A stretch of DNA of 64,000 nucleotides from Cyanophora paradoxa CCMP329 (lineage: Eukaryota; Plantae; Glaucophyta), in contig QPMI01000542.1 in NCBI GenBank assembly GCA_004431415.1, positions 434,001-498,000 on the forward strand, read 5' to 3'. The position numbers were made by a program, and so were the translations under genes. The notes below the pieces were generated by a model. The model searched no databases, was not told the DNA's origin, and saw only the letters and a list, made by a program, of their open reading frames with translations. How positions within the stretch are numbered: position 1 is the first letter of the stretch; each line of letters starts with the position of its first letter. This document shows positions 42,410 to 64,000 of this stretch, piece after piece.

Positions 42410-45400
42410 TCAGCGCGGCCTGGTCCGCGCCGTGCCCACGCCCCAATCATACCTGTTGGTGTGGTCGTACAGCTGCATCGCTTCGGCAGCCGCTGCCCAG
42501 CCGTAGTCCTCCGGGGGACAGTTCAGCGATGCGTATTCCAGGTTTTCCCCACCGCCGCGGTGCCTGGACATTAGCGCGTGGCACGCGGCGCACCGTTCTG
42601 TGCACCGCTCCTTGGTCGGCTGGCCTCGGCGCTGCCGGGATGGCCCTGCCGCGGATTGATCAGACTCGCCTGCCGCCTCGCGGACGCGCGCCTCGGTGCG
42701 TCTTCGCTTCGCGCGGCGCTCTTTCATCACCTTTGTGATCCCGCACGCTTTCTCCCACTCAGCGTAGGCCTTGCAGCGGGCGGCCCACGTCTTGTGGGCC
42801 TGCTCGCCTATCGCCGTTGTCAGCTTCCGCGTGACCTCGGCCGCCAGCTTCTCGTCCGGGATCGTCTCCCGGACCATGTCGGTAAGGCCCGCAGGCGGCA
42901 ATCCACGGAGCACACAGATCTGTGTTCGTCGTTCTAGCGGCGTGAGCGTCGGCTCGTTCACGCGCGTCACCTTGAGCGAGTTGCAGAGCGCTTGCGGGAG
43001 CGACCGCTGGAGCGGCTTCGCGAGCGCACCGCTTACAACAGCTGATATGCTTGCTTCTGCCGCAGCGCGCGCTTCCACCGCTACCGCGCTGAGGCACGTG
43101 AGCATGTGCTCGAGCGTCTCCTCCGTACCAGCGACTAGTCTGGGCGGCCGGCAATGTCTTGCTGCCGTGTGCCGCAGAGCACGCACAGCCCGTTTGGGTT
43201 CACCTCGCTGTACAGCTCTGGCGCGTCCCGCTTGCGGACCAGGGCCGTCGCCACGGTACCCAGCACCAGTTTCACATGCGTACCCCGGTAGCAGTTGCTT
43301 TCCCGGCTCACCCCGACGCGGCGGGGTCCCATCGCCATCTGATCGTACACAGCGCCGTGATCGACCGGCTCCCGCAGCCACTGGCCTGCCTGCGCCTGAT
43401 TCGACCAGGCGAAGTGCGTATGATGCGCATGCAGCACTGCGGCGTGCCTCCGGGGATCGCCTTCGACCCGCCTCGCGGTTCCGTCCGACCCCTCGATCGT
43501 CAGGACCGCCGGCATGCTGAACTCCGGCGGCAGGAAGATGCCCTCATCGATCTCCGGCTGGTCGAGCTCCCTGGCGAGCTTCGCGGCGGCGTCGGCACGG
43601 TTGTTCATCTCATCAGTGCCGTGCGCTTTGACCTTGACTAGCTCGATTTCCCGGCTGTGCTCACGCTTCGCCAGGATGGCCCGGAATCTGGACCAAGCGT
43701 AGAGCTCGGCGCTGCACGGGTGGCGGACGTAGTCGCGCGCGTGCTTGTGGTGCGCATTCTGAACGAACTGTTTGTACCACGTGCAGACGTTCTGACTGTC
43801 CGTGTGCAGCCGCAGACCTGTAGGCGCGAGCACGTCGGCGACGATCGCCGCCTGGAGCTCTGCCTTGTTGATCTCCTGGAGGCCGCGGAGCCGGCCGTAC
43901 AGCGTGGACTCCTCTCCTTCCGGATTGAGGGGCGCAACATCCGGTGCGCGGGCCGGAATCACTATTCCAAACCCCGCTCGGGCATCCGCTGTCTGACCGG
44001 CCCCCAGGCTCCCGTCCGTCCAGATGTTCAGCTTTCCTTCCGTCTCGGCGTACCGAGCGAGTTGTTCCGTCTCTGCCTTGGGCCACACTTCCAGCAGGTG
44101 CTGCCAGTACAAGTTTTCGGTCCCGCCGTGCTGCAGATCGCGTGTCCATGTCTTGGGCCCCCCGCCCGTGTAGTAAAGGTCGCGCCGTTCCGCAGATTTC
44201 GACACGGGGCGGGCCTCGTCCCTCGGCTCCGTGCTCGGCGCCGCCGCCGCCGCCGCGTCCAAGGCTACGCGCAGGTCCTCCTCGGCCTCGGGGCTCAGCT
44301 CCTCGCGGAGGAAACGTGGGTCCTCGTCCTGGACCGCCTTCACGCGGGCCTGGCGGAGGAGCTGCTGGCGTCTCTCGTCTTCATTCAGTCCGGGATCGTA
44401 GTACTCGAGCGTCATCCGCCCAGCGGCCCCTTGCGCCCTCGTCGCGACTTCGTCTCCCGGCTCTCTCCGGCGACTAGATACGTCTCGGGTTCGCCGCCCA
44501 AGCTCAAGAGGGTGTCCTCTTCCTCCCACCAACCCTCACCGTTTGTCCAAGGGCCGTCGCACTGACTCATTTCCGGGCAGCGTGCCGGGATCGGGTGCTT
44601 ACACCGCTCGTCGTGGTGCCAGTACATCTTTCCGGAGCCGGGGACTGCCGTGTACGTTTCCGGGCGCCCCTTCACCTTCTCGTGCCTGCAGTGACCGTCG
44701 CACCGGCAGTAGAGTCCGGGCTCGCTCCCGTCGGCTTCGGGGTCCGCGCCGCTCGGTATCGGCACCCAGTGCTCAAGCAGGTATTCGAACGCAACGATGC
44801 TGCCCTCCGGCGCCCTCCCTCTGACTACCCGGCCCACGTAGGGCAATGCAGCTTCATCGTGGAGCGCCTCCGCCTCGAAGACGGCTACGAAAGTCCCCGG
44901 CGTCCACTTGACCTTGCGGGCCCCGCCGGGGAGCGAGGCCATGGCCGACGCGCGCGTGCCCGCCCTTCGCATCGGGTGCCGCAGCTTCTTTCCGTCTACC
45001 GTGAGCGCTCCCACCAACTCTCGCCACCACGCAGGCTCGCTCTGCTGCAGCGTATCCTTGGGGGCCTGCGTCTGCAAGTCTCGCCAGGTGCGCACGGTCT
45101 CGCCGTCCGCAGCGGTCACCGCATCCATCGTCACTGCGCCCGCCTTGTACAGCGCGGGGGCCGCTACTCCAAAGATCGAGCTCGGTATGTGCGTCGCGAC
45201 GACGTAGCGTCGGTCGAGCCGCTCCGGATCAGGCCAAGGCGTCGTCCCGGGCATGGTGCGGAACGCCGCGTAGCGCGCGTGGTTCGACACCAGCCTGTAC
45301 TTACGCCGCTGCATCTGCGGCATGATCGCAGCCAGGGAGTTCCCGCGGGTCAGTCCGCTGGAGACGGGCGCATTCAGGAACTCGGTCGGGAGCAGCGGCA

Positions 45401-48400
45401 CGCCGAGGTCCTCCTGCAGCGCGCGCACTCGGTGCCGGACCGCCTGGGCGAGCAGCGAGCCCTCGGGTGCGCAGAGGCGGATCTGTGCCTCCGCGATCTG
45501 AGCCTCGGCCTGCAGGTGCTCGGTCCTTTTTAGGCTGTACCCCCCGTGGCTCCAGATCACGTAATTCGTCGTCGAGGCGGCGAGGTTCGCGTGGTGCTTG
45601 ACCACCCTTAGCCAGATGCGATCTAGCTCCTGGCACTGACCCTCGCTCAGGGTCATGAGCTTCAAGCCGTACGCGATTCGGGCCTGGACTACGGCCTCGA
45701 CAAGGTAGCAGGCCTCGTTCGTGGTGAGCTTTTTACGCTCTATCAGCGCCACGGCTCCTCGCGCCTGATCGCAGATGTACTGCCACTGACGATCCCAGTT
45801 CAGGTTCGCGCTCATATGCACCCCGAGGAGCTTGAAGTGCTCGTGGGGCTGGCGGACGAGCCCGACGGGGGTACCGTTAATCTTCGGCGGGGAGGGCCGC
45901 TTCTCCTTCTTCTTCGCGGCGGGGTGGGCCCCGGTTTGCTCTCAGTCTCGCGGCGTGCGTTGTTCCACGTGAAGATCGTCTTCTTCGCGTTGACCTCGAT
46001 ATCGTGCAGGCGGAAGAATTCGCCGGCCACGTCGGCCTGGGCCTGCAGCCCCCGCAGGCTGCCGCTCATCCACTTCGTGTCGTCGGCGTACGCCACGCCG
46101 CTGACGCGGGCCCGGGCCGCGCGTTCCGCGGCGTCTGTCTCTCTCGGGTTCCCATTACGTACGCTGTACCCGGCTCCTCCGCCGTCTCAGGGTGAGCATA
46201 TTGCTCTATCGTTTTCGCCACCTTCTTGCCGCACTCTCGCTCGTGCTGATCCATCCGCACTTGCGCGCAGAGGAGCGCATCGTAGAAGATCAGCCAGTGC
46301 AGCGGCGACTCGACGCCGCCCTGCGGCAGCCCGCACTCGAGCTCGAATTCGTCCGAGAGGCCGTGCCCCGAGATCGCCCTGGCCCGACGGCGTCGGAATA
46401 TGTTCCTGTGGAGCTCGATGTACCCTCCGGTACGCGCAGCCTCCGCATCGAGAGCTCCATGCTCTCCCACGAGACGGAATCGTACGCGCGCCTGATATCC
46501 TGCAGCAGGACGTAGACGGGCTTCTTGTACTGCTTCGCGTCCTCGAGGACTGCGTTAAAGACGTGGAGGGCGTCATCCGTCGAGCAACCAGGTCTGAAGC
46601 CGTAGTTGGCGCCCCTCAGGAACCCGTTCTCATGTATGGTCCGGGACAGGCGCGCGTTCAGGAGGCCCGTGGTGAGCTTCAGGGCGACCTCCTGGAGGGT
46701 GATCGGCCGCAGGTTGTTATCGATGTCTCCGTCCCATTCCCCTTGCTTCGTGATGCCAAGGATGTTGCCCTGACACACGGCGTCCGGCATGTCCCGCAGG
46801 CGGATCGCCTCCGCCACCAGCGAGAGCAGCAGCTTCCGGCCCCAGTGGACCGGCTCGCCCTCGGCAGCCCCGTCGGGGCCCCCATCCTCCTGTTCGGGGC
46901 GGGCGGGGGCCGCGCCCTTTGCCCCTTTGCCCTCGCCTTCCTCCTTTTTCTTGGGCACTTCCGCCCACAGGAACTTCACCATAGCGTACGAGAAGTTAGA
47001 CGGCCCTGCCGCCGTGTTCCCCAGCGTCTTAATGTACTCTCCGAGCTCCTGTTCGCTCGGCTCGGCCATGTCCCTTGCGTATTTGGCGGGGTCAACGTAG
47101 TCTTTCGGCTCGTATTCAAGCCTCCAGAAGTCGAGCAGCGCCCTCCCTGCGCTGTCCTTCAGCACGCTTTGAGGCAGTGTTTCCACCGTGCCCCCACTCG
47201 GGGTTGCCGGCGCTTGCACCAGGATCGCCAGTGCTCTTTCAGCAGCCGCTTCACTTCGGCAGGCTCGTTGTAGATCTCGTACGTCTTTCCGTCTCCTGAC
47301 ACCCGAGTGATATGCATGATCGGCCTGTTTCGGGGCTTCTCTAGGACCGAGGCGATGTAGGAGCCTAGTCGGCGCCCATCCATGAAGTTGTCTAGCCTGT
47401 TTTTGAGGGCCTTCTCTATTTCGCCTGCCTGCAACGCGCGGCGGATCCTCTGCAGATCGTGCCGCGTTCGGTTCTGCCATGTCTTGAGCTCTCTAAAGAA
47501 GGTCGCCCAATCTTCTTTCAGCTGCCGCCGGCGCGCAGCGGCCCAGTCATTGTCAACTTCAGCGTCCGAATTCGAAGTTGAATTCGAAGTCGAATTCGCG
47601 ATCGGCGACGATGGCCATGGGGGGGAGGACTGGGACGGGGGGGACGAAGCTGGGGTACCGCCTGCAGCTGGCGGAGATCGAGATCCGCTCGAGCTTTGGG
47701 AGTTACGTGCGTCGTCCTGGCTCTGGCTTTGGGGCCACGAGCCTTGTGCACGAGCCCGCCTTTCAGCCGGCCTCAGCGGGAACGGCCGCAGGCCTTCCTT
47801 GTCCGTCACGTAGCTCTGCAGCTTTTCTACTGCCAGGATCGTCTGCTCCGACGGAACCCCGCTGGATTCCTTGTTCCAGGCTGCCAATATGCGGGCGACC
47901 TTGGAGTCCACCTTCGCCTGCCACGGCAGGTTGCGCGGCTTGGTCGGCTTCCCGCCCCGGCGCCTCATGCTTAGATGCTCCTTTGCCACCTCCTGAACAA
48001 GTGTGGCGCTCGCAGCGTGGATTCGGGCCAGGCGGTCGAGGCGCTCCTCCGGCGTTCCCTGGCCGACCGACTCCAGGTCCGACCCCAGTGCTTCCCCGAG
48101 CTTTTTGTTAAGCTCTCGCTTCAGCTCATCCTTCTGCTTCAGCGTCCGCTTCAGGCCGTCTGGGTCGAAGACCGGCGGACCAGGCTTCGGGGTGGGCATC
48201 GGTCCCACCGGCGCGATCAGCCCGGCGCGCTCCAGGTCGAAGTCCGCGAGCACCGGGAAGTGATCCGAGTCGTGTGGCGCATCGACCCAAGTCGGGCAGG
48301 CGTGCACGCTGAGGAGCGCCTCATCGAGGGCCTTCGACACCACCACCGCATCGATGCGCGCCGCGTGCCAGAGTGCGTCCTTCGGCAGATTCGCGGGGGC

Positions 48401-49360
48401 TTCCTCTTCTGCGTGTTCCGTTCCTTCTGACTCGACGGCGCCGGCAGGCTGCGGCGGGTCTGCCTCGGCCGCCGGGCCCTGCTTCGCACCGTGCGGTGTG
48501 CGGTGCGTAACCTCGCGCGCCGAGCGCCAGGTCCCATTATCATAATCGTGGGAGTGCTGAAGCGCTGTATCGCGCAGGTCCCATGAATCTGTGAACGTGT
48601 TCCACCATTTCCTCTCCGCCGTCCTGCTCGGGACCATGGTCCCGTTGCGGATCCGCGACAGTTCGGGGATCGCTACGGAGTTCCAGTCGCCCAGCAGTAT
48701 CAGGTGCGCGTGCTGCCGAGCGCTGAAGTCGCCGTGCATCTTTGTCAGCTCCTCGACGATCTTCTCCTGATCCTGGCGGTGCGCAGCCTTGCTCACGGTC
48801 GCGGGCATGTACACGCTTGCCACGAATAGCTGGATATTCCCCTGGAACCGGAGCTCGAAGCCGATCAGCCGGCCCGGCACTTCGTACTTCTTCGTCAGGT
48901 GCTTGACCCACTGCGGCGCCACCCAGAGCGCCGCGCCGCTTCCCCGCGTACCATCGCCTGACTTCAGCGTGTACAGCAGCTTCCCGTGCGTGATTGCGCC
49001 TTCCGGCTGGAGCGGGTCCTCCCCATCCGACCGAAGCGCGGCTGCCATCTGGGGCCTAGTCATTGACAGCTCTTGCGCTCCCGCAATATCCACGTCCCAG
49101 CGCCGGCAGAATTCTTCCATTTGCTGCAGTTTGGCAGCGTTCGACCCTCTCGTGTTGAAGGTCATCGCTCTAAGGACGCCTTTCATTTTGTCTTTTTCAA
49201 TGGACGGAGAAGCCCCGATAGAATCCCCGCCTTCAGGAAACTCGATATCGGGAAAGATGTCTTTTAGCCTGTACTCGGATGCAGGCCTTGCAACTGCAGG
49301 CTTTGGAGCCTGTGCTTTCTTGCCCTTCTCTATCTTACTTTGGTTCTTCTTTCCTTTCAC
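42410..49360 (-). mobile_element. Non-LTR retrotransposon (LINE) ORF2: APE endonuclease, RT, RNase H, CCHC; frameshifted, probably 5'-truncated
   Basis: TFNTRG, AQE, LLGDWN, RIDAV, SDHFPV (APE); LRPITL, NYGFRPG, DIRRAYDSV, PQGGVESP, YADD (RT); WTDGS, NKAEL, HTDSQ, VKAH, NNRADAAAK (RNase H); CVLCG..ETLEHMLTC. Split over 7 overlapping ORFs. Confidence 0.95.
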
Positions 49361-50928
49361 TGTGGTCTAGCGACGGGGGCGCTAGTTGGGTCGCAGACAC
49401 ACGCTTGCACATACCGGACTCGCCGGCCTGTACATGTGCTCAGCTTCGGCACTACTCTGGAGACCTGGCATAGCTCGGGCTCTGCAGCTGCGCATGCATT
49501 CCCAAAGACATTCAAATTGGCGAGAGCGCTCGACGAGTCCAAGGACAGGGTGACCGCAAGCAAGTTCCCGCATGAAGGAAGCTTGTTGGCTGCAGCTGGC
49601 CAGAAGAAGGGCGCCAGAAGGGCGGGCGACTGCGGGAGGAGATCAAATCTGCAGAATTCGATCCCGTCGCGAGAGGGACGGGAATCAGCTCGGAAACCGT
49701 CGCATGCATCTTGGAATGATGCTCGGGGTCCGCACGCATGCAGGATGCGTTCATTCTCGACCGGGATCGCCGAATTCCCGAGAGGCACCGCCGGCCGAAG
49801 CCGCAGACACAACCGGCCGCAGCCGCAAAGAACATCAGGACACATGTGCATGCCCTTGAAGGGCAGCCGGCCGCAGCCGCAGTCGACCTGCGGTGCTCCG
49901 GAGCGACGTGCGGCGTTCACGCGCTTTGCCGGAGGGTTAGCCAACGTGTACATGTGCGTATGCGTACTTCCGCACGCTTCTGCGTGCGCGGGGAGGCGGA
50001 GCGGGAAGCGTTCAAACCTTTGTCATCTCTTTGGGACCTGGATGGCCGAACAGCTAGCCCTAGTGCTCCTAAGACTATTCCCACGGGTTTCCCGCGGCGG
50101 CGGTCGCCTGAAGGCTCAGGAAAGGCTTCCGACGGATCGACCTGAAATTCCCGGGGGTACCGGAAATTTCTCAGCGCGGTGAGTGCGCTGCTTTTTGTAA
50201 AGCATCCATGCACGCCGAATGATCTCAAGCAGGACGCGGCTGCTTGCAAGACCAGCCGGAGACGCAGTCGTGCGGTATACGTAGGCGGCGCGGCGGGCCC
50301 TGCAGCCGCCCGCACGCGATGGAGTCCGACTAAGCCGCGGGGGGCCGGCGCCGCCGGCAGCGGAGCGGACGGTGACGGCGAGCCTAAGGTGCACGTGGCG
50401 GCGGCGAGCCGCGGACGGTGAGCCGGGCTCGGGCCCGGGCGCCGGCGGGTCCTCAGCCCCCTCGCAGCTCCTCGCGAGGCCCGCCCGCGCCCTCGAGCGG
50501 GGGCGCGGGGAGCCCTCCAAAGGGGCGCCCCCCGATCGAGAGGCACCGGTACCGCAGAGGGCGGCGGCGGTGGCGCCCGTCCCTCCCCCGGCCAGCCCCG
50601 GCCCCGGCCCCGGCCCCGCACTCTTCTCCCTGCCCCGGCCCTCCTCTCTCCCGGGGCCGGGTCTCTCCCTGCCCCGGCCCCGCACTCTTCTCCCTGCCCC
50701 GGCCCTCCTCTCTCCCGGCCTCTCCCTGCCCCGGCCCTCTCCCTGCCCCGGCCACGCTTTGAGGGAGGGCCGGGGCAGGGAGAGAGGCGGGGCCGCACCG
50801 GCCCCGCCTCTCTCCCTGCCCCGGCCCTCCCTCAAAGCGTCGCCGGCCCTCCCCCGCGCCTTCGCCGCAGGCGCACCGTACCCCTCCCCGCAACCTTCCC
50901 CTCCCCGACCTGCTCAGCCGCCCCGTCA

Positions 50929-51184
50929 GATGGCCCGAGGCGGGGCGGGGACCGAGACGAGGTGGAGCGGGCAGCGCTGACGATCCAGCGGCACCTGCGG
51001 GGCTACCAGGTGCGGAAGAAGCACGGGTGGCGGCGGCGGCGGCCGGCGTCGATGAAGGAGGAGGAGGCCGCGGCGAGTTCGGCAATCGCCCCGGCCCGTC
51101 GTCCGCGGCTTCCTGATGCGTCCGCAGGCCGTGATCCAGAAGCAAGCATGGATCAAGGAGCACCATGAGCGGCTCGCCCGCTAG
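50929..51184 (+). pseudogene. IQ-motif-containing gene fragment
   Basis: Exon after CCCCGTCAG reads EVERAALTIQRHLRGYQVRKK (IQxxxRGxxxR); the next exon AVIQKQAW ends in a stop; no convincing 5' end. Confidence 0.5.
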
Positions 51185-51292
51185 CGCTGTGCCGCCGCAC
51201 CCCGACGGCCTCCTGACGGCCTCCTGGGGCCGTTCGGGGCCGGACCGCCCCCGTAAGAGCCTCGAGAGCGGCGGCTCTCCGATCAGCCGCGG

Positions 51293-53502
51293 CCGAGCAC
51301 CGCAAGTTTTTGCGGCACACCGCCGTCCTGCACGGCCGCGGTGCGCGCCGCGCCGCGCCACGCGCGCCGCCGCCGCTCCATCCGCCATCCAACGCGGACG
51401 CGGCCCACGCACTGCAGTCGAGGAGGTCATTCCCGGCACCGTCCGCGTCTCGGGCCGCGCCGAGCTCGTCCCGTACGATTTCCTGGCGAGCGGGGTTGGG
51501 CCCGCGCGTGCGTTCTTGCCGGCGCTAACCCTCTCTCTGGTGCCCAGGTCGTGGCGACGGGCGTGTCCTACAGCGGGTGGAAGGCAGAGGAGGCCACCGC
51601 AGACGTGCGGCCTTCCCGTCCCGCCGCCCTGCGCCGGCGCCGTCGTCCGACTCCTGCGCCGGGTACAGGAGCGCGTCGTGGCGCTGCGGGGCATGCGGGA
51701 CCGTCTGCGGAGCGCGCGGCGCGTGCTCATCGTCGGGGGCGGCCCCACGGGCGTCGAGGCGCGCGCTCCGCCCCCTCCCCGCGCCCCCTCGCGTCGCCCG
51801 CCCCCCGCGCGCCGCTCCGAACGCGACCGCAGGCGGCGGCGGAGATTCTGATGGCGGCGCCCAAGCGCGAGGTCACCCTCGTCCACAGCGGCCCCGCCCT
51901 CCTCGTGCGCCCCCGCGGCCCCGCCCCGCCCCGCCCGGCTCACCTGAGCCTGGGCCCGGGCAGGACGAGCTGGGGAGCGAGAAGATCTCGCGGCACGCGC
52001 ATGAGTTCCTCGCCCGCCACGGCGCCAACGTGCGCCGAGCACGCCCAACGTACCCCCCCGCTTCGTCTCTTGATCGCGTCTGCTCAGATACTTCTGAACG
52101 ACCGCGTGGAGGGCGTGAGCCCGGGCATCTTCTTCGGTACCCCGGCCCCCTCCCCGCCCCGCTGCGGCACCGCCTCACTCCGCGCCGCCGCCCCGCAGGC
52201 ACGGAGGAGCGCCGCACCAGGCGCGTCTGGGCCGCCGCTCGAGGTGGACGTCTAGACGGCTAGAGCCGGCCAGAGGGGACACCGCTCGCCTCCGCGGGCA
52301 CGTCCAGTGCTCTCCTATCCACTGCCTTCCTCGCCTTCAATCACGCGCGCCCGGCCCCCCGCTCGCAAATCTCTTAGCTCGAAGCTCAGCTCCTGCTCTC
52401 AAAGCTTAGCTCTTAGCTCTTATCTCTCAAATCTCCCGCTCGCAAAATCTCTCGGATCGAAGCTGAGCTCCGGGGCGGCAGGAGCGGCGCGGTGGTCGCC
52501 GCGGACGCGGCTCTGGTGGCGGTGGGCGGGGGCCGCCCCAACGCCGCCTTCCTCGCCCGCGCCTTCCTCACCGCCCTGGTACCCCCCTCTCCTTCCCCCC
52601 CCCCCTGCCCCTCCTCTCTCTTCTCGGCCCGCCGCCCCCTCCCGTCCCCCCTCGCCACCCCCCTCTCTCCCGAGTCCCCGACGGCCCCCCCGCAGGACGG
52701 CTCCGGCTTTGTGCGCGTCGACGCCACGCTCCGGGTACACCCCCGCCCCTCTTTGAAGCAACGTACCCCCTGTCCCTTAGCTCGCCCCCCCCTCCCCCCC
52801 CCCCCCCCCGCCCCCCCCCTTCAGGTGGTCGGCACGACGAACGTTTTCTCGGCGGGCGACGTGTGCACGGCCCCGGGCCGAAAGGCGCGCGCCGATCTGA
52901 TCTGATCCGATTTAGTCTGAGCCTCCGATCTGATCTGATCTGAGGCCCCGCCCCTGCAGGGCGCCTACGCGGCGGGGCTGCACGCGGCCGTCATCGCTGA
53001 GAACATCCGCCGCCTCGCAGTGAACCCCCAGGCGCGCCCGAGCGGCTCCAGATTCAGATTAAGCCCAAGTATAGAATTAAGTTGGCGCCGCGCCGCGCCT
53101 ACCCCCCCGTGACTCGGCCCCCGGCCCCCCCGCAGGCGAGCCTGAAGGAGTTCTCGCCCGCCCCGCCGATCTGCCTCGTCCGCCCCCGCCCCCGCCCCTC
53201 CCCCCCGCGCCCGCCAGCTCTGACGCTGGCGCACGCGCGGCTCAGGTGACGCTGGGGGCGGGGGACGGCGGGCTGGCGACGCCCTGGTTCGGCCTCACGG
53301 GCTGGCTCCCCAAGAAGATGAAGGCCGAGGACATGTTCGTGCCCCGCACGGTACGGTACCCCCCCGGCCCCGCCCCGCCCCGCCCCGCCTTCTTCTCTTC
53401 GAGCTGGAGAGGCCGGCCGCTGATCGGAGCGGGGTGGGGGCGCGCGCGCACGCGCAGAGGAGCGAGCTGGGGCTGGATCAGAAGGGCTGCGCCTGCCTGT
53501 AG
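51293..53502 (+). pseudogene. 5'-truncated paralogue of the AIFM2/FSP1-like gene
   Basis: Homology to 30412-32649 starts abruptly at CCGAGCACCGCAAG, mid exon 2. It lacks the first GxGxxG FAD motif. The remaining exons appear open with the same intron positions and end CACL*. Confidence 0.85.
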
Positions 53503-56576: not shown

Positions 56577-59500
56577 ATGGGCTGCGGGGCGTCAGCACCT
56601 GAACCGACTACAGCTCGTTCTCTGAACCCTACAGCATCTGCGGCACCTGCGCCCCCGCAGCCGGCATCTGCGGCACGTTCGCCCCCGCAGGCGGCATCTG
56701 CGGCACCTGCGCCCCCGCAGGCAGAATCTGCGGCACCTGCGCCCCCAGGCCCGCAGGCGGCATCTGCGGCACCTGCGCCACCGCAGGCAGATCAAGAATC
56801 TGCGGCACCTGCGCCCCCGCAGGCAGAATCTGCGGCACCTGCAGCTGCGCCCCCGGGCCCGCAGGCGGCATCTGCGGCACCTGCGCCACCGCAGGCAGAT
56901 CTAGAATCTGCGGCACCTGCGCCCCCGCAGGCAGAATCTGCGGCACCTGCGCCCCCGCAGTCAGAATCTGCGGCATCTGCGCCCCCGCAGCAGCAGGCAT
57001 CAGCCACGGCGGCCGCGGCACCTGTAGCTGCAGCTGTACATGTCAGGCCAACAGCTTCAGCCACACATGCATATGCCGACGTCGCAGCTGCGCCGACGGC
57101 GTCGAACGCGACGTCCGCAGCGGAAGTTCCTCACCGGTACGACATCTTCATCTCGCACAAGCAGTCCTCTGGTGAAGATCTCGCCCGCATCTTCAAGACG
57201 ACGGTGCGAGCAGGGCCTGCGCGGGCTAGCCAAGCGCTCGCTGCACAGAACTGACGGGGCCGCCGGCGTGCGCAGGCGGAGAAGGTGACGGGGGAGCTCG
57301 GCATCGAGCTGCGCATCTTCCTCGACCGCGACGACCTCAACGACATCCAGGACCTCAGCGCCAACATCCGCGCCTCCCGCAGCGTCCTCCTCCTCCTCAC
57401 CAAGGGTCCGTTCCCCCCCCCCCCCCCCCCCCCCCCCCCTCGCGATCGATCCGCCGCTAAACGCTTGGGCTGCTCATCGTTAATCCTCCCTCTCATCGCG
57501 CCGCTTCATTCCGAGCCCGCCTCGTGCATGTGCTCAGTACGCTCGCGCCGTGCAGACGTGTTCCGCAGCAAGTTCGTGCTGCAGGAGCTGAAGGCGGCGG
57601 ACGAGGCCGCCGTGAAGATAGTCACCGTCTGGAACCGCGAGGGCGCTAACGGCGTACCCGAGTTCCCCTTCGGTCTGCCCCCTCCCCCCCCCCCCTCTCT
57701 CCGCCCCGTCTTCCCCTCCCCTCCCCGAACGCGTCCCACCTGCCCCTCTTCCCTCCCTCCGAGCCCCCCCCCACCCCCCCCCCCACCCCTCCCTCCTCAC
57801 CTTTATCATGATTTCTTTTACCAATTTTTCGACCCTTGATCATGATCAATGTTTACCTGCACTTTCCTCTACCGCCCCCCCCCCCGCCCCCCTTCCTTCG
57901 GGCGCTCTAGATCTCCTGTCCCCCTCCTTCCCACCATTCCCCCCATCCCCCCCCCGCCCCCCCCCCCCCCCCCCCCGTGCCCTTTCTCCTCCCACTCTTC
58001 CTCCTCCTGTAGATCTTGACCCTTGATTCTACGTATACGGCCTTTGACACCCATGACATTTATATGATTAGCCTTCCTTCGGCCCTGTTCTGACGCAGCG
58101 ATCACGAGCGCAGCGGCGACGGTCGAACTGCCGCCCTCCACGGAGCTCGGCGCGGTGGGCCTCGACGAGGAGGCGGCGCGGGCGCTGCTCGGCCGCGTCC
58201 TCAAGGTCAAGGCCGAGACGTACTACCGCGACGGAGAGCACCACCGCATCTGCATCGAGGAGGCCCTCGAGCGCTGCGGCGTCGAAGTGCGCAGCGCCGC
58301 CGCCGCCGGCTCCGGGCCCGTCCACACCGCCGTCCGCAAGGTCCGCTCCCAAGTCGTGCAGGGCGCGCGGCATTTCTCAGGATCCTCGCCCTTAATCCGC
58401 TCGCGATCGCGATCGCGCAGTACGCAAAGGCGGAGGTGGGGAACACGGAAGCGACGGAGGCGCTGGCGCTGTACGTGCACCCGAAGGCGACGACGGACGC
58501 CGCCCGCCGCAACGTCGTCGACCTCGCCGGCCACGTTGTCGCCTTCCTCCGCCGCCACATGCCCGTGCCAGAGGGGTCCGCGGCCAGCCGCACGGCCGCG
58601 CCAGCTGCCCCCGCCGCCGCCGGTGGCGCCCGCGTGCTGCTCATCGCGGGCGAGCCCGGCTCCAGCAAGTCGACCTTCCTCGCGCACCTGCATCGCCGCG
58701 CCTGCGAGCAGTGGGCCGGGGCGGACGGCCGCCCGCCCGCCGGCGACGACCGGCTGCCGGTCACGTGCCTCTTGCGCCTCTCGAACCTCACGCGGGAGCG
58801 GGCGGCGAGCGGGCTGCGGGCGGAGGTGGCCGACGCCCTCAGCTTGCCCGAGGCCGACCTCCCTGCCCTGCGCGAGAGGCGTGCCGCTGCCCGCCACCGC
58901 CGCCCCGCCCACCATTCCTCACTGCCCCCCCTCGTGCACAGCCGCGGGCTGGTGCTTCTGCTGGACGCGTACGACGAGCTGGAGACGGGGGCCGGCCGCC
59001 CGCCGGCCCTCTGGAGCCGCAACGAGCTCGGCAAGTGGGCCTCCGCCGTCGTCGTCACGTGCCGCTCGGCGTACCTCGCCGCCCAGCCCGACTACCCCGT
59101 GCGCCGCTCCTCGCGATCGGCCCTCCGCAGCCTCGCCCGCCCGCCCCGGTGCGCCCTGCGACCGCCCCGCAGTCGCTGTTCGCGCCGGCTGGCGATCGCG
59201 GCGCGCTTGAGGAGGTCTGCACCCACCCCTTCGATGCCGGACAGGTGCCCGCCCTTCCGACAGCGGCTGTTCAGGCCCCGTGCTGACCGCCGCGGGCCGT
59301 CCTTCAGGTGGAGGACTACATTCGCAAGTACACCGGCCTGTACGGGCCAAGTGCCCCCGAAGGGTTGCGGGACCGGGACTGCACGTGGACGGCGGAGGAG
59401 TACGCGGCGCGCATTGCCCAGGTCCCCGGCACCGCGACGCTCATCGAGAACCCCTTCACGCTCACGTGCGTCCGATCCGATTATTTGTGCCGACTCGCGT

Positions 59501-62500
59501 CTGATAATTGCAATTGCCGTCGCCTCGGGCGCGCAGAATGGTCGTGAAATCGCTGCCGAAGATACTGAAGAGCCGGTGAGCCCCGCTTTTCGCGCGTCAA
59601 CGCGCCAGTTGTCGATGTCTCACTTTTACATTCCGCAGCGAGGCGGCTCACGATCATTTGGAGAAACCGACAGCCAAGGCCGCCGCAACGTACCTCCTGA
59701 CGATTCGCGAGCTCTACCAGCAGTTCGTCGAGGCGCGCGGGGGCGCTGCGCATGCCGCCCCGTTGCAATTGGTTATGGGCCGCTAGGCGATTGGTGGCTG
59801 ACTGCGTTCGCGGGCAGCTGTGGTTCACGCGGCAGTGGGAGAAGTCGACGTTGACGGCAGCGGGGGCGGCCAAGGAGCTCGAGACGGGTACGGGCTGATG
59901 TGTCTTTTCCAAGACCCATGAACAGCTGTAGTCTGCACGATCGCACTTTCATGATCCCCAAATCACCTTTCACCAATCGCTATATATTTCAAGCAATGAT
60001 ATCTTTGATCTCGTGATCTGATGCTTATAGTTATACGTAACGCTGTCGCCAGGCGACCTGAAGGATTGGACGCTGAGCGACTTCCAGGAGAATACCCGCG
60101 GATACTGCAAATTGCTGGCCGACGCCATGTTTCGAGTGAGGCTTCCGCCCTCTAGATCTGCAGCGTTCGCCGCTGACGCCAGGGACTGTGCAGGCGGCCA
60201 TCTCCGAAGTGCTCTGCCCTCCGAAGAAGGCGAAGGTCGCTCAGTTCCTTCTTCGCGGCGCGAAGGCGGCGGATGTGACGGCGACGGCGGCCGCGCCGGC
60301 CGAGGGCGCGCAGAGCGCCGACCTCAGGCTCTGCATCGAGCTCCTCACGGACACGTCGGACCCCGTCCTCGCCTTCTGCCGCGACAACTGCCCCCTGCGC
60401 GTCGCCCGGGCGGCCGACGGCGGCACGGCCGTCCGCTTCCTCCACAAGGCCCGCCCGCTTTACGGCGCCGTCCCTCGCCCTGACGTCTGCGACAGACGCT
60501 CCTGGAGTACTTTGTTGCAGAGGGGGCGTACGCCGACGGCGCCAACGCGTTCCGATCAGTGCGTGCAGCTCGCCACTCCCGCCAATTCACGACCCAAAAG
60601 TGTGCTTTCTCCGCTTTATAAAATTACAGGCGATTGAGAGCGAGGCGGCCCCGCAAGAGGAGCTCGCCCGGCTGCGCGTGAAGCTGCGGGCCCTGCGCCG
60701 CGTGCAGAGCATCGCCGACGGCAGCGCCGCCGTCACGCGGGCGGACCCCAGCCTCCTCCACCTGCGGTGAAGCATTCACACGTTTCGCGTTCCTGCCTGG
60801 CATTCACACGTGTTGGCGTTGCTTGGACCAGGTTGCTGACAAAGGAGCCGAAGATCCTCCAGTTCCTCGCTGACTGCTGTACGGCTGACGTCGACTACCG
60901 TAACGTGCGCTGCAGCTGTGCCTGAACACATTAATTGCTTGCCTCGAAATCGGAGTCCGGCGCAGAAACTGCTGGATCTGATGGAAAGGAGCCGCCACGA
61001 TGACGCCACGCCGGGAGACATCATCGCCTCGGCCAACGCTATGACGATCCTGAACCGCGGTGCGGTCCACCTGCTCGCGATCGCGACGCTGTTGACACTG
61101 TGCGCACTGCGGCAGCTGGCTACAGCTTTGCGGGCAGCAGCCTCCGACGCGTGCGGGTGCCCGGGGCCGACCTGCAGCGGCTGGAGGCGGCGGGCGCGGA
61201 CCTGCGCGGGGCGGACCTCACGGGCTGCAACCTTCTCGACGCGAACCTCGCCGGGGCGGACCTCCGCGGGGCCGTGCTCACCGACTGCAGCGTCACCCTC
61301 AACCCGGCGCTCTGGGGGCATGAAGATCGTGTGCGGGCTGTCGCCATAACTCGGGTGCGCTGCTCAGTAGATGATGATGAGCGGGTGCCTGTGGCTGATT
61401 TTCGGCCACAGGACGGGAAGCGCGCCGTGTCGGGGGGCGACGACAAGACGCTGCGGGTGTGGGACCTGGAGAGCGGGGCGGAGCTGCGGTGCCTCGTGGG
61501 CCTCGAGTACATGGTCACCTCGGTGGCGATCTCGCCGGTGCACTGGGGGCGGGGCCAAAATTCCGGGCCAGAGGCCGATCGTGGGTGCCTCGGGGGCCTC
61601 TCGGCGGGCCGCAGGACGGGAAGCGCGCCGTGTTTGGGAGCTTGCACAGGAAGCTGCGGGTGTGGGACCTGGAGAGCGGGGCGGAGCCGCAGTGCCTCGA
61701 CCACTGGGGCCACGAGGGCGTGGTCCGCTCGGTGGCAATCTCGCCGGTGTGCTGGGGAGCGGGCCAGGGCTCGGGGCCCGAGGCTGATCGCGGGGGCCTC
61801 GGGGGCCTCTCGGCGGGCCGCAGGACGGGAAGCGCGCCGTGTCGGGGAGCGACGACAAGACGCTGCGGGTGTGGGACCTGGAGAGCGGGGCGGAGCTGCG
61901 GTGCCTCGCGGGCCACAAGAGTGAGGTCACCTCGGTGGCGATCTCGCCGGTGCGCGGGCGGCGGGCCGGGGTCGGGCCCTGAGGCTTACCATGGGGCCTC
62001 GGGGGTCTCTCGGCGGGCTGCAGGACGGGAAGCGTGCCGTGTCGGGGAGCAGCGACAAGACGCTGCGGGTGTGGGACCTGGAGAGCGGGGTGGAGCTGCG
62101 GCGCCTCGCGGGCCACGAGAACATGGTCACCTCGGTGGCGATCTCTCCGGTGCGTGGGGGGCGGGCCTGGGCTCGGGGTCTGAGGCTGATCGGAGGGGCC
62201 TCGGGGGCCTCTCGGGGGGCCGCAGGACGGGAAGCGCGCCGTGTCGGGGAGCTGGGACAAGACGCTGCGGGTGTGGGACCTGGAGAGCGGGGTGGAGCTG
62301 CGGCGCCTCGCGGGCCACGAGGGCGCGGGCATGATCACCTCCGTGGCGATCTCGCCGGTGCACAGGCCCTGAGGGGGCGGGGCCGGGGCTCGAAGCCCGA
62401 CGCTGATCGCGGGGGCCTTGGGGCCCCCTGGGCGGGCCGCAGGACGGGAAGCGCGCCGTTTCGGGGAGTGGAGACGACACGCTGCGGATGTGGGACCTGG

Positions 62501-64000
62501 AGAGCGGGGCGGAGCTGCGATGCTTCGCGGGCCACGAGGGCGAGGTCTCATCGGTGGCGATCTCGCCGGTGCACTGGGGGCGGGGCCGGGGCTCGGGGCC
62601 CGAGGCTGATTGCAGGTGCCTGGGGGCCTCTCGGCGGGCTGCAGGACGGGAAGCGTGCCGTGTCGGGGAGCAGCGACAAGACGCTGCGGATGTGGGACCT
62701 GGAGAGCGGGGCGGAGCTGCGGCGCCTCGAGGGCCACGAGGGCGCGGTCAACTCAGTGGCGATCTCGCGGGTGCTTAGAAGGCGGGCCGGAGCTCGGGTT
62801 CTAATCAAGAGTCTGATTGCAGGGGCCTCGCGATCGGGGGCCTCTTGGCGGGCCGCAGGACGGGAAGCGCGCCGTGTCGGGGGGCGACGACAAGACGCTG
62901 CGGGTGTGGGACCTGGAGAGCGGGGCGGAGCTGCGGCGCCTCGCGGGCCACGAGGGCGCGGTCAACTCAGTGGCAATCTCGCCGGTGTGTGGGGCGCAGG
63001 CTGGGGTTTGGGTCTGGGTCTGCGGCTGATAAATTGGGCCTCGGGGGCCTCTCGGGGGGCCGCAGGACGGGAAGCGCGCCGTGTCGGGGAGCTGGGACAA
63101 GACGCTGCGGGTGTGGGACCTGGAAAGCGGGGCGGAGCTGCGGCGCCTCGCTGGCCACGAAGGCGAGGTCACCTCAGTAGCGATCTCACCAGTGCGCAGG
63201 GGGCAGGGGCGGGGCTGGGGGCCCGAGGCTAATTGCAGGGGCCTCGGGGGCCTCTTGGCGGGCTGTAGGATGGGCAGCGCGCCGTGTCGGGGAGCAAAGA
63301 CAGGACGCTGCGGATGTGGGACCTGGAGAGCGGGGTGGAGCTGCGGCGCCTCGCGGGCAACGATTGGGCGGTCTCGTCGGTGGCGATCTCGCCGGTGCGC
63401 GGGGGCCGGGCTGGGGCTCGGGGTCTGAGGCTGATTGGGGGTGCCTTGTGGCCCCCTCGGTGGGTCGCAGGACGGGAAGCGTGCCGTGTCGGGGAGCGAA
63501 GGCCACTATATGCGGGTGTGGGACCTGGAGAGCGGGGCGGAGCTGCATGCGCAGCAACTTCATAACTCTGACTACACGGTCCTCTCGGTGGCAATCTCGC
63601 CGGTGCGTGGGGGTGGGCCGGGGCTGGGGGCCCGAGGCTGATCGCGGGTGGTTTGGGTGCCTCTCGGCGAGCTGCAGGACGGGAAGCGCGCCGTGTCGGG
63701 GAGCAACGACAAGACGCTGCGGGTGTGGGACCTGGAGAGCGGGGCGGAGCTGCGGCGCCTCGCGGGCAACGATTGGGCGGTCTCGTCGGTGGCGATCTCG
63801 CCGGTGCGCGGGGGCCGGGCTGGGGCTCGGGGTCTGAGGCTGATTGTGGTTGCCTTGGGCCCCCCTGGGTGGGTCGCAGGACGGGAAGCGCGTTGTTTCG
63901 GGGAGCGGCGACCTGTTTGGCAAAGACAACACGCTGCGGATGTGGGACCTGGAGAGTGGGTTGGAGCTGAGGTGCTTCGGGGGCAACGAGGGCGCGGTCA
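56577..64000 (+). CDS. NLR-like STAND protein: MGCGAS - Pro/Ala repeats - TIR - NACHT - pentapeptide repeats - WD40 array (runs off the window)
   Basis: TIR YDIFISHKQ..IFLDRDDL..SRSVLLLLTKDVFRSKFVLQEL; Walker A IAGEPGSSKST; Walker B LVLLLDAYDEL; VVVTCRS; NPFTL; FLHK-TLLEYFVA; SANAMTILNR..PGADL..GADLRGADL; then DGKRAVSGSxDKTLRVWDLESGAELRRLAGH repeats. Confidence 0.9.
56636..56995 (+). repeat. Coding ~30-bp tandem repeat (SAAPAPPQAE)n
   Basis: About 11 copies of TCTGCGGCACCTGCGCCCCCGCAG, in frame after MGCGAS. Confidence 0.88.
61412..64000 (+). repeat. Array of exon+intron units (~200 bp), one WD40 repeat per exon
   Basis: Exons begin AG|GAYGG at about 61412, 61615, 61824, 62024, 62226, 62443, 62645, 62859, 63066, 63269, 63471, 63678 and 63880. 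They mostly end TCGCCG|GT. The first is exactly 126 nt (61412-61537). Confidence 0.93.

What the first reader, a model, noticed from the sequence alone, without database searches (positions are those of the whole stretch)
56577..61350. N-acylated TIR-NACHT-pentapeptide-WD40 NLR architecture
Seen: MGCGAS (predicted myristoylation plus palmitoylation), a Pro/Ala spacer, a TIR with the catalytic-position Glu (FVLQEL), NACHT, and a SANAMTIL..GADL pentapeptide linker before the WD40s. As I recall, the NACHT-ANAITIL-pentapeptide-WD40 module occurs in Mortierellaceae fungi, their endobacteria and ciliates. Here it is intron-rich, so it is native or long domesticated. Inference: a membrane-anchored TIR-NLR that evolved independently of plant TIR-NB-ARC-LRRs.
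Basis: partly seen in the sequence, partly recalled or inferred. Interest (0 to 1): 0.8.

Follow-up and report, generated by a model that had tools for sequence, protein, structure and literature searches.

The report
Algal lipid-tagged TIR-NACHT-WD40 receptor gene
The glaucophyte alga Cyanophora paradoxa carries an intron-rich gene for an immune-receptor-like switch protein with a probable lipid-anchor start, a probable NAD-cleaving TIR domain, an animal/fungal-type NACHT ATPase, a short pentapeptide-repeat linker and a long WD40 sensor; it belongs to a family of at least 25 genes that no paper in the searched library describes.

Summary
From ATG 56577, 18 exons to 61354 plus one-blade WD40 exons to the window end give one open frame with no stop or frameshift. 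The organism is Cyanophora paradoxa. The gene is annotated (P0001, 1732 aa), but that model lacks the MGCGAS start and first TIR strand and errs at three GC-AG introns.

- **TIR:** supported by exon-by-exon tiling on paralogs. A profile hits C. elegans TIR-1/SARM1 with the catalytic Glu aligned, and a paralog model matches RPS4, SARM1 and RPP1 TIRs.
- **NTPase:** NACHT-type (NLRP9, NLRP3, NLRC4, NOD2), not NB-ARC.
- **Linker:** the pentapeptide repeat and the A-N-A-x-T-I-L motif are confirmed.
- **Relatives:** Ciliates were not found.
- **Origin:** the Cyanophora genes form their own clade, so this is not a recent transfer.
- **Mosaic:** TIR exons resemble one paralog group and the chassis another, with the break at a phase-0 intron.

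Unproven: no RNA evidence was obtainable. The Pro/Ala spacer has atypical codon usage and may be intronic. Acylation, NADase activity and an immune role are inferred. The scan flagged this family before on other DNA of this genome.

The parts
56577..56594 (+). Start codon and M-G-C-G-A-S: consensus for N-myristoylation (Gly2, Ser6) plus a palmitoylatable Cys3
   Evidence: Read directly. It is the only in-frame ATG upstream of the TIR. Paralog P0023 begins with the identical M-G-C-G-A-S, and 9 further paralogs start with MG plus nearby Cys. A at -3 and G at +4.
56634..57131 (+). Pro/Ala-rich ORF (30-nt repeat 56632-56995, then a non-repeat stretch). It is either a flexible spacer or an intron.
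   Evidence: TRF gives 11.2 copies of period 30. The frame is kept through several 6-nt indels. GC3 is only 0.42-0.51, against 0.76-1.00 in the other exons. An alternative GT-AG intron 56617-57120 keeps the frame.
57132..57203 (+). End of exon 1: TIR first strand and helix (Y-D-I-F-I-S-H-K-Q-S...)
   Evidence: 16/22 to 19/23 identical to the TIR start of paralogs P0006, P0007 and P0009. GC3 is 0.83. Missing from the annotated model P0001.
57276..57405 (+). Exon 2: TIR second strand and BB-loop region
   Evidence: 32-35 of 42-43 residues identical to P0006/P0007/P0009, colinear with exon 1.
57556..57672 (+). Exon 3: TIR helix C with the catalytic-position Glu (codon 57585-57587, in F-V-L-Q-E-L)
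   Evidence: In the profile A1 alignment to C. elegans TIR-1 (8p2m), this Glu pairs with the Glu of V-H-K-E-L, the SARM1-type catalytic position. It is conserved in the TIRs of P0006, P0007, P0010, P0011 and P0012.
58114..58340 (+). Exon 4: C-terminal half of the TIR domain. An alternative acceptor 15 nt upstream, at 58099, is also in frame.
   Evidence: 42/65 and 38/61 identical to P0006 and P0007. The 58114 acceptor gives the same length as the paralogs (read). The exon ends in phase 0, at the swap boundary.
58421..58878 (+). Exon 5: start of the NACHT module, with Walker A G-E-P-G-S-S-K-S at 58649-58672
   Evidence: Pfam NACHT 24.4 bits (cut-off 26.7) and AAA_16. 85-88% identical to P0002/P0023. 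The GC donor at 58879 is supported by 23 homologs that lack the 21-residue insert.
58942..59098 (+). Exon 6: Walker B (L-L-L-D-A-Y-D-E, 58949-58978) and sensor region
   Evidence: D165, D168 and E169 are nearly invariant in alignment A2. The motif is present in the paralogs.
59173..61059 (+). Exons 7-17: the rest of the NACHT module (helical and winged-helix domains), ending with S-A-N-A-M-T-I-L at 61029-61052
   Evidence: Exon table. Profile A2 hits NLRP9, NLRP1, NLRC4 and NLRP3. The AF2 model hits NLRP3, NOD2 and NLRC4 over about 600 columns. The linker residues N, A and L are invariant in 24 homologs.
61116..61354 (+). Exon 18: pentapeptide repeats (about 61193-61288) and the first WD40 strand
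   Evidence: PF00805 E=7.9e-13, 48.1 bits against a cut-off of 20.2.
61412..64000 (+). Array of 13 one-blade WD40 exons (126-132 nt) separated by phase-0 introns of 74-88 nt. It runs off the window.
   Evidence: TRF period 202, 12.2 copies. Exon list. P0001 has 15 Pfam WD40 stretches. P0001 residue 1464 maps to 63999.

Best explanation
This is one nuclear gene of Cyanophora paradoxa. It encodes an NLR-like STAND protein with these parts in order:
1. A probable dual-acylation start (M-G-C-G-A-S).
2. Possibly a Pro/Ala spacer.
3. A TIR domain with the catalytic-position Glu.
4. A NACHT NTPase module.
5. A conserved A-N-A-x-T-I-L plus pentapeptide-repeat linker.
6. About 17 WD40 blades.

Inferred mechanism, by analogy with solved NLRs, plant TIR receptors and SARM1:
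1. The WD40 propellers hold the NACHT in an inactive, nucleotide-bound state.
2. A ligand binds the variable WD40 surface and releases the NACHT.
3. The NACHT oligomerises.
4. The clustered N-terminal TIR domains form composite active sites that cleave NAD+.
5. This causes NAD+ depletion or nucleotide signalling, probably at a membrane if the lipid anchor is real.

What is shown is the domain content, one open spliced frame, family membership and the mosaic origin. What is inferred is acylation, NADase activity, oligomerisation, the ligand and an immune or cell-death role.

The gene is a recombinant. A TIR cassette of the P0006/P0007/P0009 type sits on a chassis of the P0002/P0023 type, joined at a phase-0 intron (58341-58420).
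For: - **Frame:** one open frame across 18 exons plus the WD40 exons.
- **Annotation:** the public model P0001 joins TIR, NACHT and WD40. So do the paralog models P0006, P0007 and P0010-P0012.
- **Exon order:** exons 1-5 tile colinearly on P0006 and P0007.
- **TIR:** Pfam TIR_2 is sub-threshold (18.8 bits for P0001, 25.8 for P0006). Profile A1 hits TIR-1/SARM1 at E=0.0026 with the Glu aligned. The AF2 model of the paralog proxy has pLDDT 81.9 and matches RPS4, SARM1, TIR-1, ROQ1 and RPP1 TIRs at E of 1e-6 or lower. It reaches TM 0.82 against Atlas TIR clusters.
- **NACHT:** profile A2 hits NLRP9, NLRP1 and NLRC4 (E of 4e-6). The model hits NLRP3, NOD2 and NLRC4.
- **Pentapeptide:** above the Pfam cut-off.
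- **Acylation-type N-termini:** found in 10 of 25 paralogs.
- **Mosaic identity pattern:**
- **Family size:** at least 25 genes.
Against:
- The leader after codon 6 and the Pro/Ala stretch have GC3 of about 0.45, unlike every other exon.
- The public annotation chose a different, clearly defective, start.
- The TIR and NACHT of this very gene score below Pfam's gathering cut-offs.
- The TIR fold evidence comes from a paralog (P0007, 58-77% identical per exon), not from this gene's joined sequence.
- Walker A has Ser instead of the canonical Gly before Lys, so normal NTP handling is not assured.
- Several WD40 blades are degenerate.
- No biochemical data exist for any family member.
Confidence: 0.6

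Rival explanations
1. The gene is the same but the front end differs. The Pro/Ala repeat is not translated: either it is an intron (for example GT-AG 56617-57120, which joins a 13-residue M-G-C-G-A-S leader almost directly to the TIR), or the real first exon lies elsewhere. On this reading the 'spacer', and possibly the lipid anchor, are artefacts of reading a GC-rich minisatellite in an open frame.
For: - GC3 is 0.42-0.51 in 56577-57131, against 0.76-1.00 elsewhere.
- Another frame is also open across the repeat.
- Each repeat unit carries an acceptor-like c-c-c-c-g-c-a-g.
- A frame-compatible GT donor exists at 56617 and an acceptor at 57120.
- Paralog P0009 has only 13 residues before its TIR.
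- The gene predictor avoided this ORF.
Against: - The repeat keeps frame 0 through at least three independent 6-nt indels.
- P0006 and P0023 models also have long Ala/Pro/Ser-rich leaders after an MGC start.
- The donor G-T-T-C-T-C is unlike the local G-T-G-C-G-C consensus.
- The intron variant still keeps M-G-C-G-A-S.
Confidence: 0.35
2. The protein is as modelled, but the TIR is a non-enzymatic assembly or adaptor domain (as in TLR adaptors), or the protein works in something other than defence, such as cell-cell recognition, stress-induced cell death or signalling scaffolding.
For: - Nothing in the data addresses activity or biological role.
- TIR scores are weak.
- No match above threshold to any anti-phage or defence family in PADLOC or NCBIfam.
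- Fungal NACHT-WD40 relatives act in allorecognition (general knowledge of HET-E).
Against: - The Glu at the SARM1/plant-TIR catalytic position is conserved in all TIR-bearing paralogs examined.
- The nearest solved structures are all NAD-cleaving TIRs.
Confidence: 0.2
3. It is a young chimeric duplicate that is not expressed or is decaying (a pseudogene in the making), produced by recombination among clustered paralogs.
For: - Mosaic structure with 85-95% identity to the neighbouring paralogs P0002/P0023.
- Degenerate WD40 blades.
- Atypical leader codon usage.
- A LINE-like element just upstream.
Against: - No stop or frameshift in 30 or more exons.
- High GC3 in all domain exons.
- Catalytic and nucleotide-binding motifs are intact.
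Confidence: 0.1
4. A recent horizontal acquisition from Mortierella-type fungi or their Burkholderia-related endobacteria, or contamination by them.
For: The nearest non-Cyanophora relatives are exactly these organisms, and they share the linker motif and domain order.
Against: - Only 25-28% identity to them.
- All 21 Cyanophora sequences form one clade outside the bacterial-plus-fungal clade (SH-aLRT 97 and 95).
- 30 or more spliceosomal introns.
- Host-like 65-70% GC and GC3.
- At least 25 paralogs on many contigs.
- A lineage-specific Walker A variant.
Confidence: 0.03

Closest known systems
NACHT-PPR-WD40 NOD-like receptors of Mortierellomycota and of Mycoavidus cysteinexigens / Candidatus Glomeribacter (Ciach et al., bioRxiv 10.1101/2021.12.02.471044; Wojciechowski et al. 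2022, PMC9815663)
   Same: - Same order: NACHT, then A-N-A-x-T-I-L, then pentapeptide repeat, then WD40.
- They are the best non-Cyanophora hits over 85-95% of the module.
- They form the sister clade in the tree.
   Different: - Only 25-28% identical.
- They carry an ARM_5 (alpha-solenoid) N-terminal domain, not a TIR.
- Their Walker A is the canonical G-x-x-G-x-G-K-S/T, against G-x-x-G-x-S-K-S/T here.
- The bacterial copies have no introns.
- No MGC start was seen in them.
Plant TIR-NB-ARC-LRR receptors (RPP1, ROQ1, RPS4, RUN1)
   Same: - N-terminal TIR with the Glu in an aromatic-x-L-x-E-L helix.
- The TIR model's best structural matches include RPS4, ROQ1, RPP1 and RUN1.
- Same logic: sensor repeat, STAND switch, TIR effector.
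   Different: - The switch is NACHT, not NB-ARC.
- The sensor is WD40, not LRR.
- A pentapeptide linker is present.
- The fusion is therefore an independent assembly.
SARM1 / C. elegans TIR-1 NAD+ hydrolase
   Same: - Best sequence-profile match of the TIR (8p2m, E=0.0026), with the catalytic Glu aligned.
- Structural match at rmsd 3.2.
   Different: - No ARM or SAM domains in this gene.
- Regulation would be by a STAND switch rather than an ARM-bound NMN/NAD sensor.
- Identity is about 20%.
Fungal NACHT-WD40 receptors (HET-E, NWD2 type) and animal NLRs (NLRP3, NLRC4, NOD2)
   Same: - NACHT fold with helical and winged-helix domains.
- WD40 sensor with near-identical repeats, as in HET-E (general knowledge).
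   Different: - No pentapeptide linker in those families.
- Different effector domains (HET, PYD, CARD).
- LRR sensors in the animal receptors.
N-acylated plant NLRs such as Arabidopsis RPS5 (general knowledge, not tested here)
   Same: MG plus Cys start, predicted to give a myristoyl-palmitoyl membrane anchor on an NLR.
   Different: - RPS5 is a coiled-coil NB-ARC-LRR protein.
- Acylation here is only a motif prediction.

Membership tests
TIR domain (Pfam clan STIR; TIR_2 PF13676) | Score above the Pfam gathering cut-off | tested here: not met
   P0001:1-225 scores 18.8 bits and P0006 scores 25.8 bits, against a cut-off of 28. P0001 lacks the first strand. The joined exon model was not scanned.
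TIR domain (Pfam clan STIR; TIR_2 PF13676) | Flavodoxin-like TIR fold | tested here: met
   Tested on a paralog proxy (P0007:308-480, 58-77% identical per exon). pLDDT is 81.9, and Foldseek probability is 1.00 to RPS4, SARM1, TIR-1, ROQ1 and RPP1 TIRs. TM is 0.82 to an Atlas TIR cluster.
NAD+-cleaving TIRs (SARM1, plant TIRs, bacterial TIR NADases) | Glutamate at the catalytic position of helix C | tested here: met
   The Glu of V-L-Q-E-L (codon 57585-57587) aligns with the Glu of V-H-K-E-L in TIR-1.
NAD+-cleaving TIRs (SARM1, plant TIRs, bacterial TIR NADases) | Measured NADase activity | not testable with these tools
   Needs an enzyme assay.
NACHT NTPase (PF05729, STAND class) | Score above the Pfam gathering cut-off | tested here: not met
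   24.4 and 24.0 bits against a cut-off of 26.7 for this gene. Several paralogs and all outside relatives carry precomputed PF05729 hits.
NACHT NTPase (PF05729, STAND class) | Profile and fold closer to NACHT than to NB-ARC or other STAND clades | tested here: met
   Profile A2 puts NLRP9, NLRP1, NLRC4 and NLRP3 on top, with no NB-ARC protein listed. The model puts NLRP3, NOD2, NLRP9 and NLRC4 on top.
NACHT NTPase (PF05729, STAND class) | Canonical Walker A (G-x4-G-K-S/T) and Walker B (hhhhD-x-x-D-E) | tested here: inconclusive
   Walker B is intact. Walker A has Ser in place of the Gly before Lys in all 24 Cyanophora paralogs that show the motif, while Lys and Ser/Thr are kept.
NACHT-PPR-WD40 receptors (Mortierellomycota / Mycoavidus type) | Order NACHT, A-N-A-x-T-I-L linker, pentapeptide repeat, WD40 | tested here: met
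   The linker residues N, A and L are invariant in 24 homologs.
NACHT-PPR-WD40 receptors (Mortierellomycota / Mycoavidus type) | Groups with that family in a tree, to the exclusion of other NACHT proteins | tested here: met
   Cyanophora plus the endobacteria and Mortierellaceae plus one metagenome protein form a group at SH-aLRT 95 against six other bacterial NACHT proteins. This is a quick tree with long outgroup branches.
NACHT-PPR-WD40 receptors (Mortierellomycota / Mycoavidus type) | ARM_5 / 'NLR_Helical' N-terminal domain | tested here: not met
   This gene has a TIR instead. No ARM-like exon is present in the window.
Plant TNL (TIR-NB-ARC-LRR) | NB-ARC switch and LRR sensor | tested here: not met
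   NACHT and WD40 are present instead.
N-myristoylated, palmitoylated proteins | Met-Gly start, small or uncharged residues at positions 3-5, Ser/Thr at 6, Cys near Gly2 | tested here: met
   M-G-C-G-A-S read at 56577. The same or similar starts occur in 10 of 25 paralogs.
N-myristoylated, palmitoylated proteins | The motif is the real N-terminus and is lipidated | not testable with these tools
It needs 5' RNA ends, mass spectrometry or click-chemistry labelling.

The most novel reading that the evidence does not exclude
Cyanophora, an early-branching relative of plants, runs a large innate-immunity-like repertoire built on a bacterial/fungal-type NACHT-pentapeptide-WD40 chassis rather than on NB-ARC. 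Effector heads (TIR, ARM-like, SAM-TIR and others) are exchanged between paralogs by recombination at a conserved phase-0 intron. Many members, this one included, are tethered to membranes by dual acylation, so that a ligand-triggered TIR NADase fires at the membrane.
Probability: 0.35. Interest if true: 0.8.

Novelty: new variant of a known kind. Interest (0 to 1): 0.62.

Why it matters
- **Origin of plant-lineage immune receptors.** Plant NLRs use NB-ARC, and searches for them in glaucophytes came back empty (for example PMC8891106 found no APAF1_C module in Cyanophora). This gene and its 25 or more relatives show that a glaucophyte has a rich NLR-like repertoire of the other STAND type (NACHT). 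Here that chassis is fused to a plant/SARM1-like TIR.
- **Repeated invention.** The same sensor-switch-TIR logic was assembled again on a different chassis.
- **A family thought to be narrow.** This links an alga to a receptor family otherwise reported only from Mortierellomycota and their endobacteria.
- **A visible case of effector swapping.** The exchange happened at an intron boundary.
- **Testable biochemistry.** The family-wide Gly-to-Ser change in Walker A and the recurrent lipid-anchor starts are concrete handles.
- **Annotation.** The public gene model is wrong at its start and at three GC-AG introns.

Tried and rejected
- **Joined spliced protein.** It was not sent to any search or fold tool. 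It was built only inside local scripts, to check frame and GC3. All searches used single exons by reference, the annotated protein P0001, or paralogs.
- **Pfam on single TIR exons.** Nothing was found; the pieces are too short.
- **Paralog DNA.** The look-up of encoding contigs for P0006 found nothing on record, so intron positions could not be compared between paralogs.
- **Word search with the P0006 TIR among large proteins.** It returned only P0006 and P0001, so no outside TIR-NLR with this TIR subtype was seen.
- **PADLOC and NCBIfam.** Only weak sub-threshold hits (SAVED-TIR, ThsB, ThcB4, Avs4), so no membership in a known anti-phage family.
- **Ciliate relatives.** None appeared. This is not proof of absence.
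- **Recent horizontal transfer or contamination.** Rejected on the tree, the introns and base composition.
- **Alternative first exon.** An ARM-like alternative upstream in the window was looked for by tblastn and not found.
- **Literature.** No paper in the library holds Cyanophora together with NACHT and TIR, or with NLR and 'TIR domain'. One search found only a negative NB-ARC/APAF1_C survey.

Full report
**Organism and locus.** The window is 65% G+C. An exhaustive HMMER search with the largest NACHT exon returned a 1732-residue protein that is 100% identical over all 226 query residues (P0001). Its close relatives are all EukProt entries of Cyanophora paradoxa, with gene names of the form tig000..._g....t1. 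The window is therefore nuclear DNA of this glaucophyte alga. The finding is an annotated gene whose model is partly wrong.

**Gene model.** I read the three forward frames and placed splice sites by hand.
- Eighteen exons run from the ATG at 56577 to 61354, with 17 introns of 47-426 nt.
- Joined inside a local script, they give one frame with no stop and no frameshift.
- After them come 13 exons of 126-132 nt, each encoding one WD40 blade, separated by phase-0 introns of 74-88 nt. They run to the window end.
- P0001 residue 1464 maps to 63999, so about 268 residues lie beyond the window.
- The joined protein was not sent to any search or fold tool. Every search used single exons by reference, P0001, or paralogs.

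**Corrections to the public model.**
- P0001 starts with a short out-of-frame peptide and skips Y-D-I-F-I-S-H-K-Q-S-S-G-E-D, the first strand of the TIR. Paralogs P0006, P0007 and P0009 have this strand contiguous with the next helix.
- P0001 has a 21-residue insert and a 13-residue insert, and it lacks V-R-F-L-H-K. All three features are unique among 24 aligned homologs.
- All three disappear if GC donors are used at 58879, 59733 and 60449. The F and K of R-F-x-H-K are nearly invariant in the family.
- At the exon 3/4 junction, the acceptor at 58113 gives the same length as the paralogs. An acceptor 15 nt upstream is also in frame.

**TIR.**
- Single exons are too short for Pfam.
- The four TIR pieces tile end to end on P0006 (residues 98-119, 121-162, 165-201, 204-268) and on P0007, at 58-83% identity.
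- Pfam TIR_2 is sub-threshold: 18.8 bits for the truncated P0001 and 25.8 for P0006, against a cut-off of 28.
- A profile of the two paralogs plus the window exons finds C. elegans TIR-1 (E=0.0026), a SARM1/TIR-1 chimera and AbTir in the PDB. The Glu of V-L-Q-E-L (57585-57587) pairs with the Glu of V-H-K-E-L. To my knowledge this is the SARM1 E642-equivalent position.
- An AlphaFold model of the P0007 TIR, used as a proxy, has pLDDT 81.9. It matches RPS4, SARM1, TIR-1, ROQ1, RPP1 and RUN1 TIR domains and TIR clusters of the ESM Atlas at TM up to 0.82.
- The TIR call and the catalytic-position Glu therefore stand. Activity is untested.

**NACHT.**
- The exon with Walker A scores 24.4 bits for Pfam NACHT, against a cut-off of 26.7.
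- A profile of 24 family modules hits NLRP9, NLRP1, NLRC4, NLRP3 and NLRP6. No NB-ARC protein is listed.
- A model of the module (pLDDT 77) matches NLRP3, NOD2, NLRP9 and NLRC4 over about 600 columns.
- Walker B is canonical.
- Walker A reads G-E-P-G-S-S-K-S. The Gly before Lys is Ser in all 24 Cyanophora paralogs that show the motif. Every relative outside Cyanophora that shows the motif has Gly there.

**Linker and sensor.** The pentapeptide repeat passes Pfam (E=7.9e-13). The preceding A-N-A-x-T-I-L motif is present in the Cyanophora paralogs and in the fungal and bacterial relatives. Its N, A and L are invariant in alignment A2.

**Relatives.**
- A word search with the NACHT-to-linker region found 19 further Cyanophora proteins. 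The next hits were Lobosporangium, Mortierella, Linnemannia and Benniella proteins at 25-29% identity, some over more than 85% of the region.
- A scan of one genome per bacterial species found 278 stretches. The best 80 were all Mycoavidus cysteinexigens or Candidatus Glomeribacter gigasporarum.
- P0042 and P0018 are Mycoavidus proteins.
It is published as NACHT-PPR-WD40 receptors passed from Mycoavidus to Mortierellomycota (bioRxiv 10.1101/2021.12.02.471044; see also PMC9815663).
- No ciliate appeared.
- Atlas look-alikes show the NACHT-pentapeptide-WD40 chassis with other heads in Actinomycetota, Cyanobacteriota and Pseudomonadota.
- The outside relatives carry ARM_5 heads, not TIR.

**Tree.** I built a quick IQ-TREE of 45 modules.
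- All 21 Cyanophora sequences fall in one clade (SH-aLRT 97).
- That clade sits beside a clade of endobacteria with Mortierellaceae nested inside (95).
- Six other bacterial NACHT proteins served as the outgroup. Their branches are long, so the root is not secure.
- Together with the introns, the host-like composition and at least 25 genes on many contigs, this excludes a recent transfer or contamination. It leaves an old bacterial origin open.

**Mosaic origin.**
- Per-exon identities show that exons 5-18 are mostly 85-95% identical to P0002 and P0023, but only about 50% identical to P0006/P0007.
- The TIR exons are 58-83% identical to P0006/P0007/P0009 and have no counterpart in P0002/P0023, which carry ARM-like heads.
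- The first ten residues resemble P0023 (both begin M-G-C-G-A-S).
- The switch point is the phase-0 intron 58341-58420.

**N-terminus.**
- M-G-C-G-A-S fits the myristoylation consensus, with Cys3 available for palmitate.
- It is the only in-frame ATG of the ORF that holds the first TIR strand.
- Ten of 25 paralog models start with MG plus Cys.
- Codons 7-185 have GC3 of 0.42-0.51, while every other exon has 0.76-1.00.
- Another frame is also open across the repeat. Each repeat unit looks like a splice acceptor, and a frame-keeping GT-AG intron 56617-57120 is possible.
- My odds are about 0.65 that the protein starts at 56577, and about 0.45 that the Pro/Ala stretch is translated.

**Verdict.** This is a real, ordinary-looking member of an extraordinary and apparently undescribed Cyanophora family. 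That family has been flagged several times by this scan on other DNA of the same genome.
- **Architecture:** firmly supported.
- **Mechanism:** ligand-released NACHT oligomerisation clustering a TIR NADase, probably at a membrane. This is inference by homology.
- **Literature:** no paper in the searched library holds Cyanophora together with NACHT and TIR, or with NLR and 'TIR domain'. The search brought up only a negative survey for the NB-ARC/APAF1_C module.

Noticed in passing
window 58649-58672, and paralogs P0002-P0015, P0023-P0032, P0039: Walker A reads G-x-x-G-x-S-K-S/T (Ser instead of the near-universal Gly before Lys) in all 24 Cyanophora paralogs that show the motif. All Mortierellaceae, Mycoavidus and other relatives keep Gly. 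This looks like a lineage-wide P-loop variant under conservation.
   Followed up: partly
window 58879, 59733, 60449: Three of the 17 introns need GC-AG rather than GT-AG. Each is backed by 23 homologs. The public model P0001 avoided them and so carries two false inserts and one false deletion.
   Followed up: yes
window 56634-57131: The Pro/Ala leader has GC3 of 0.42-0.51, against 0.76-1.00 in the other exons. Each 30-nt repeat unit contains an acceptor-like c-c-c-c-g-c-a-g.
   Followed up: partly
window 43135-52048, minus strand: Long ORFs with an AP-endonuclease domain (47159-49357, PF03372) and RNase H (43135-44529, PF00075). This is probably a LINE-like retroelement lying between the LRR-SAM-TIR gene and this gene.
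   Followed up: no
window 40364-40684, minus strand: tblastn with the SAM region of paralog P0012 hits here (E=2e-11).
   Followed up: no
window 57413-57439 and 57939-57976: Poly-C runs of 27 and 38 nt lie inside introns 2 and 3. The public model translated parts of intron 3 as a proline-rich insert.
   Followed up: partly
paralog gene names: The paralogs are clustered: four on tig00000042 (g15539, g15546, g15549, g15554), two adjacent on tig00001231, and P0002 and P0023 on tig00021070.
   Followed up: no
L003 7807-9580: A double-NACHT paralog (P0017) that groups with Mycoavidus sits next to phage holin, lysozyme and tail-assembly genes. It is on a 75-kb contig of assembly GCA_016307145.1.
   Followed up: no
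P0006 residues 146-247: The C-terminal half of the paralog's TIR also gives a sub-threshold hit to VMAP-C (PF20028, E=4.5e-5), a domain of bacterial vWA-MoxR conflict systems.
   Followed up: no
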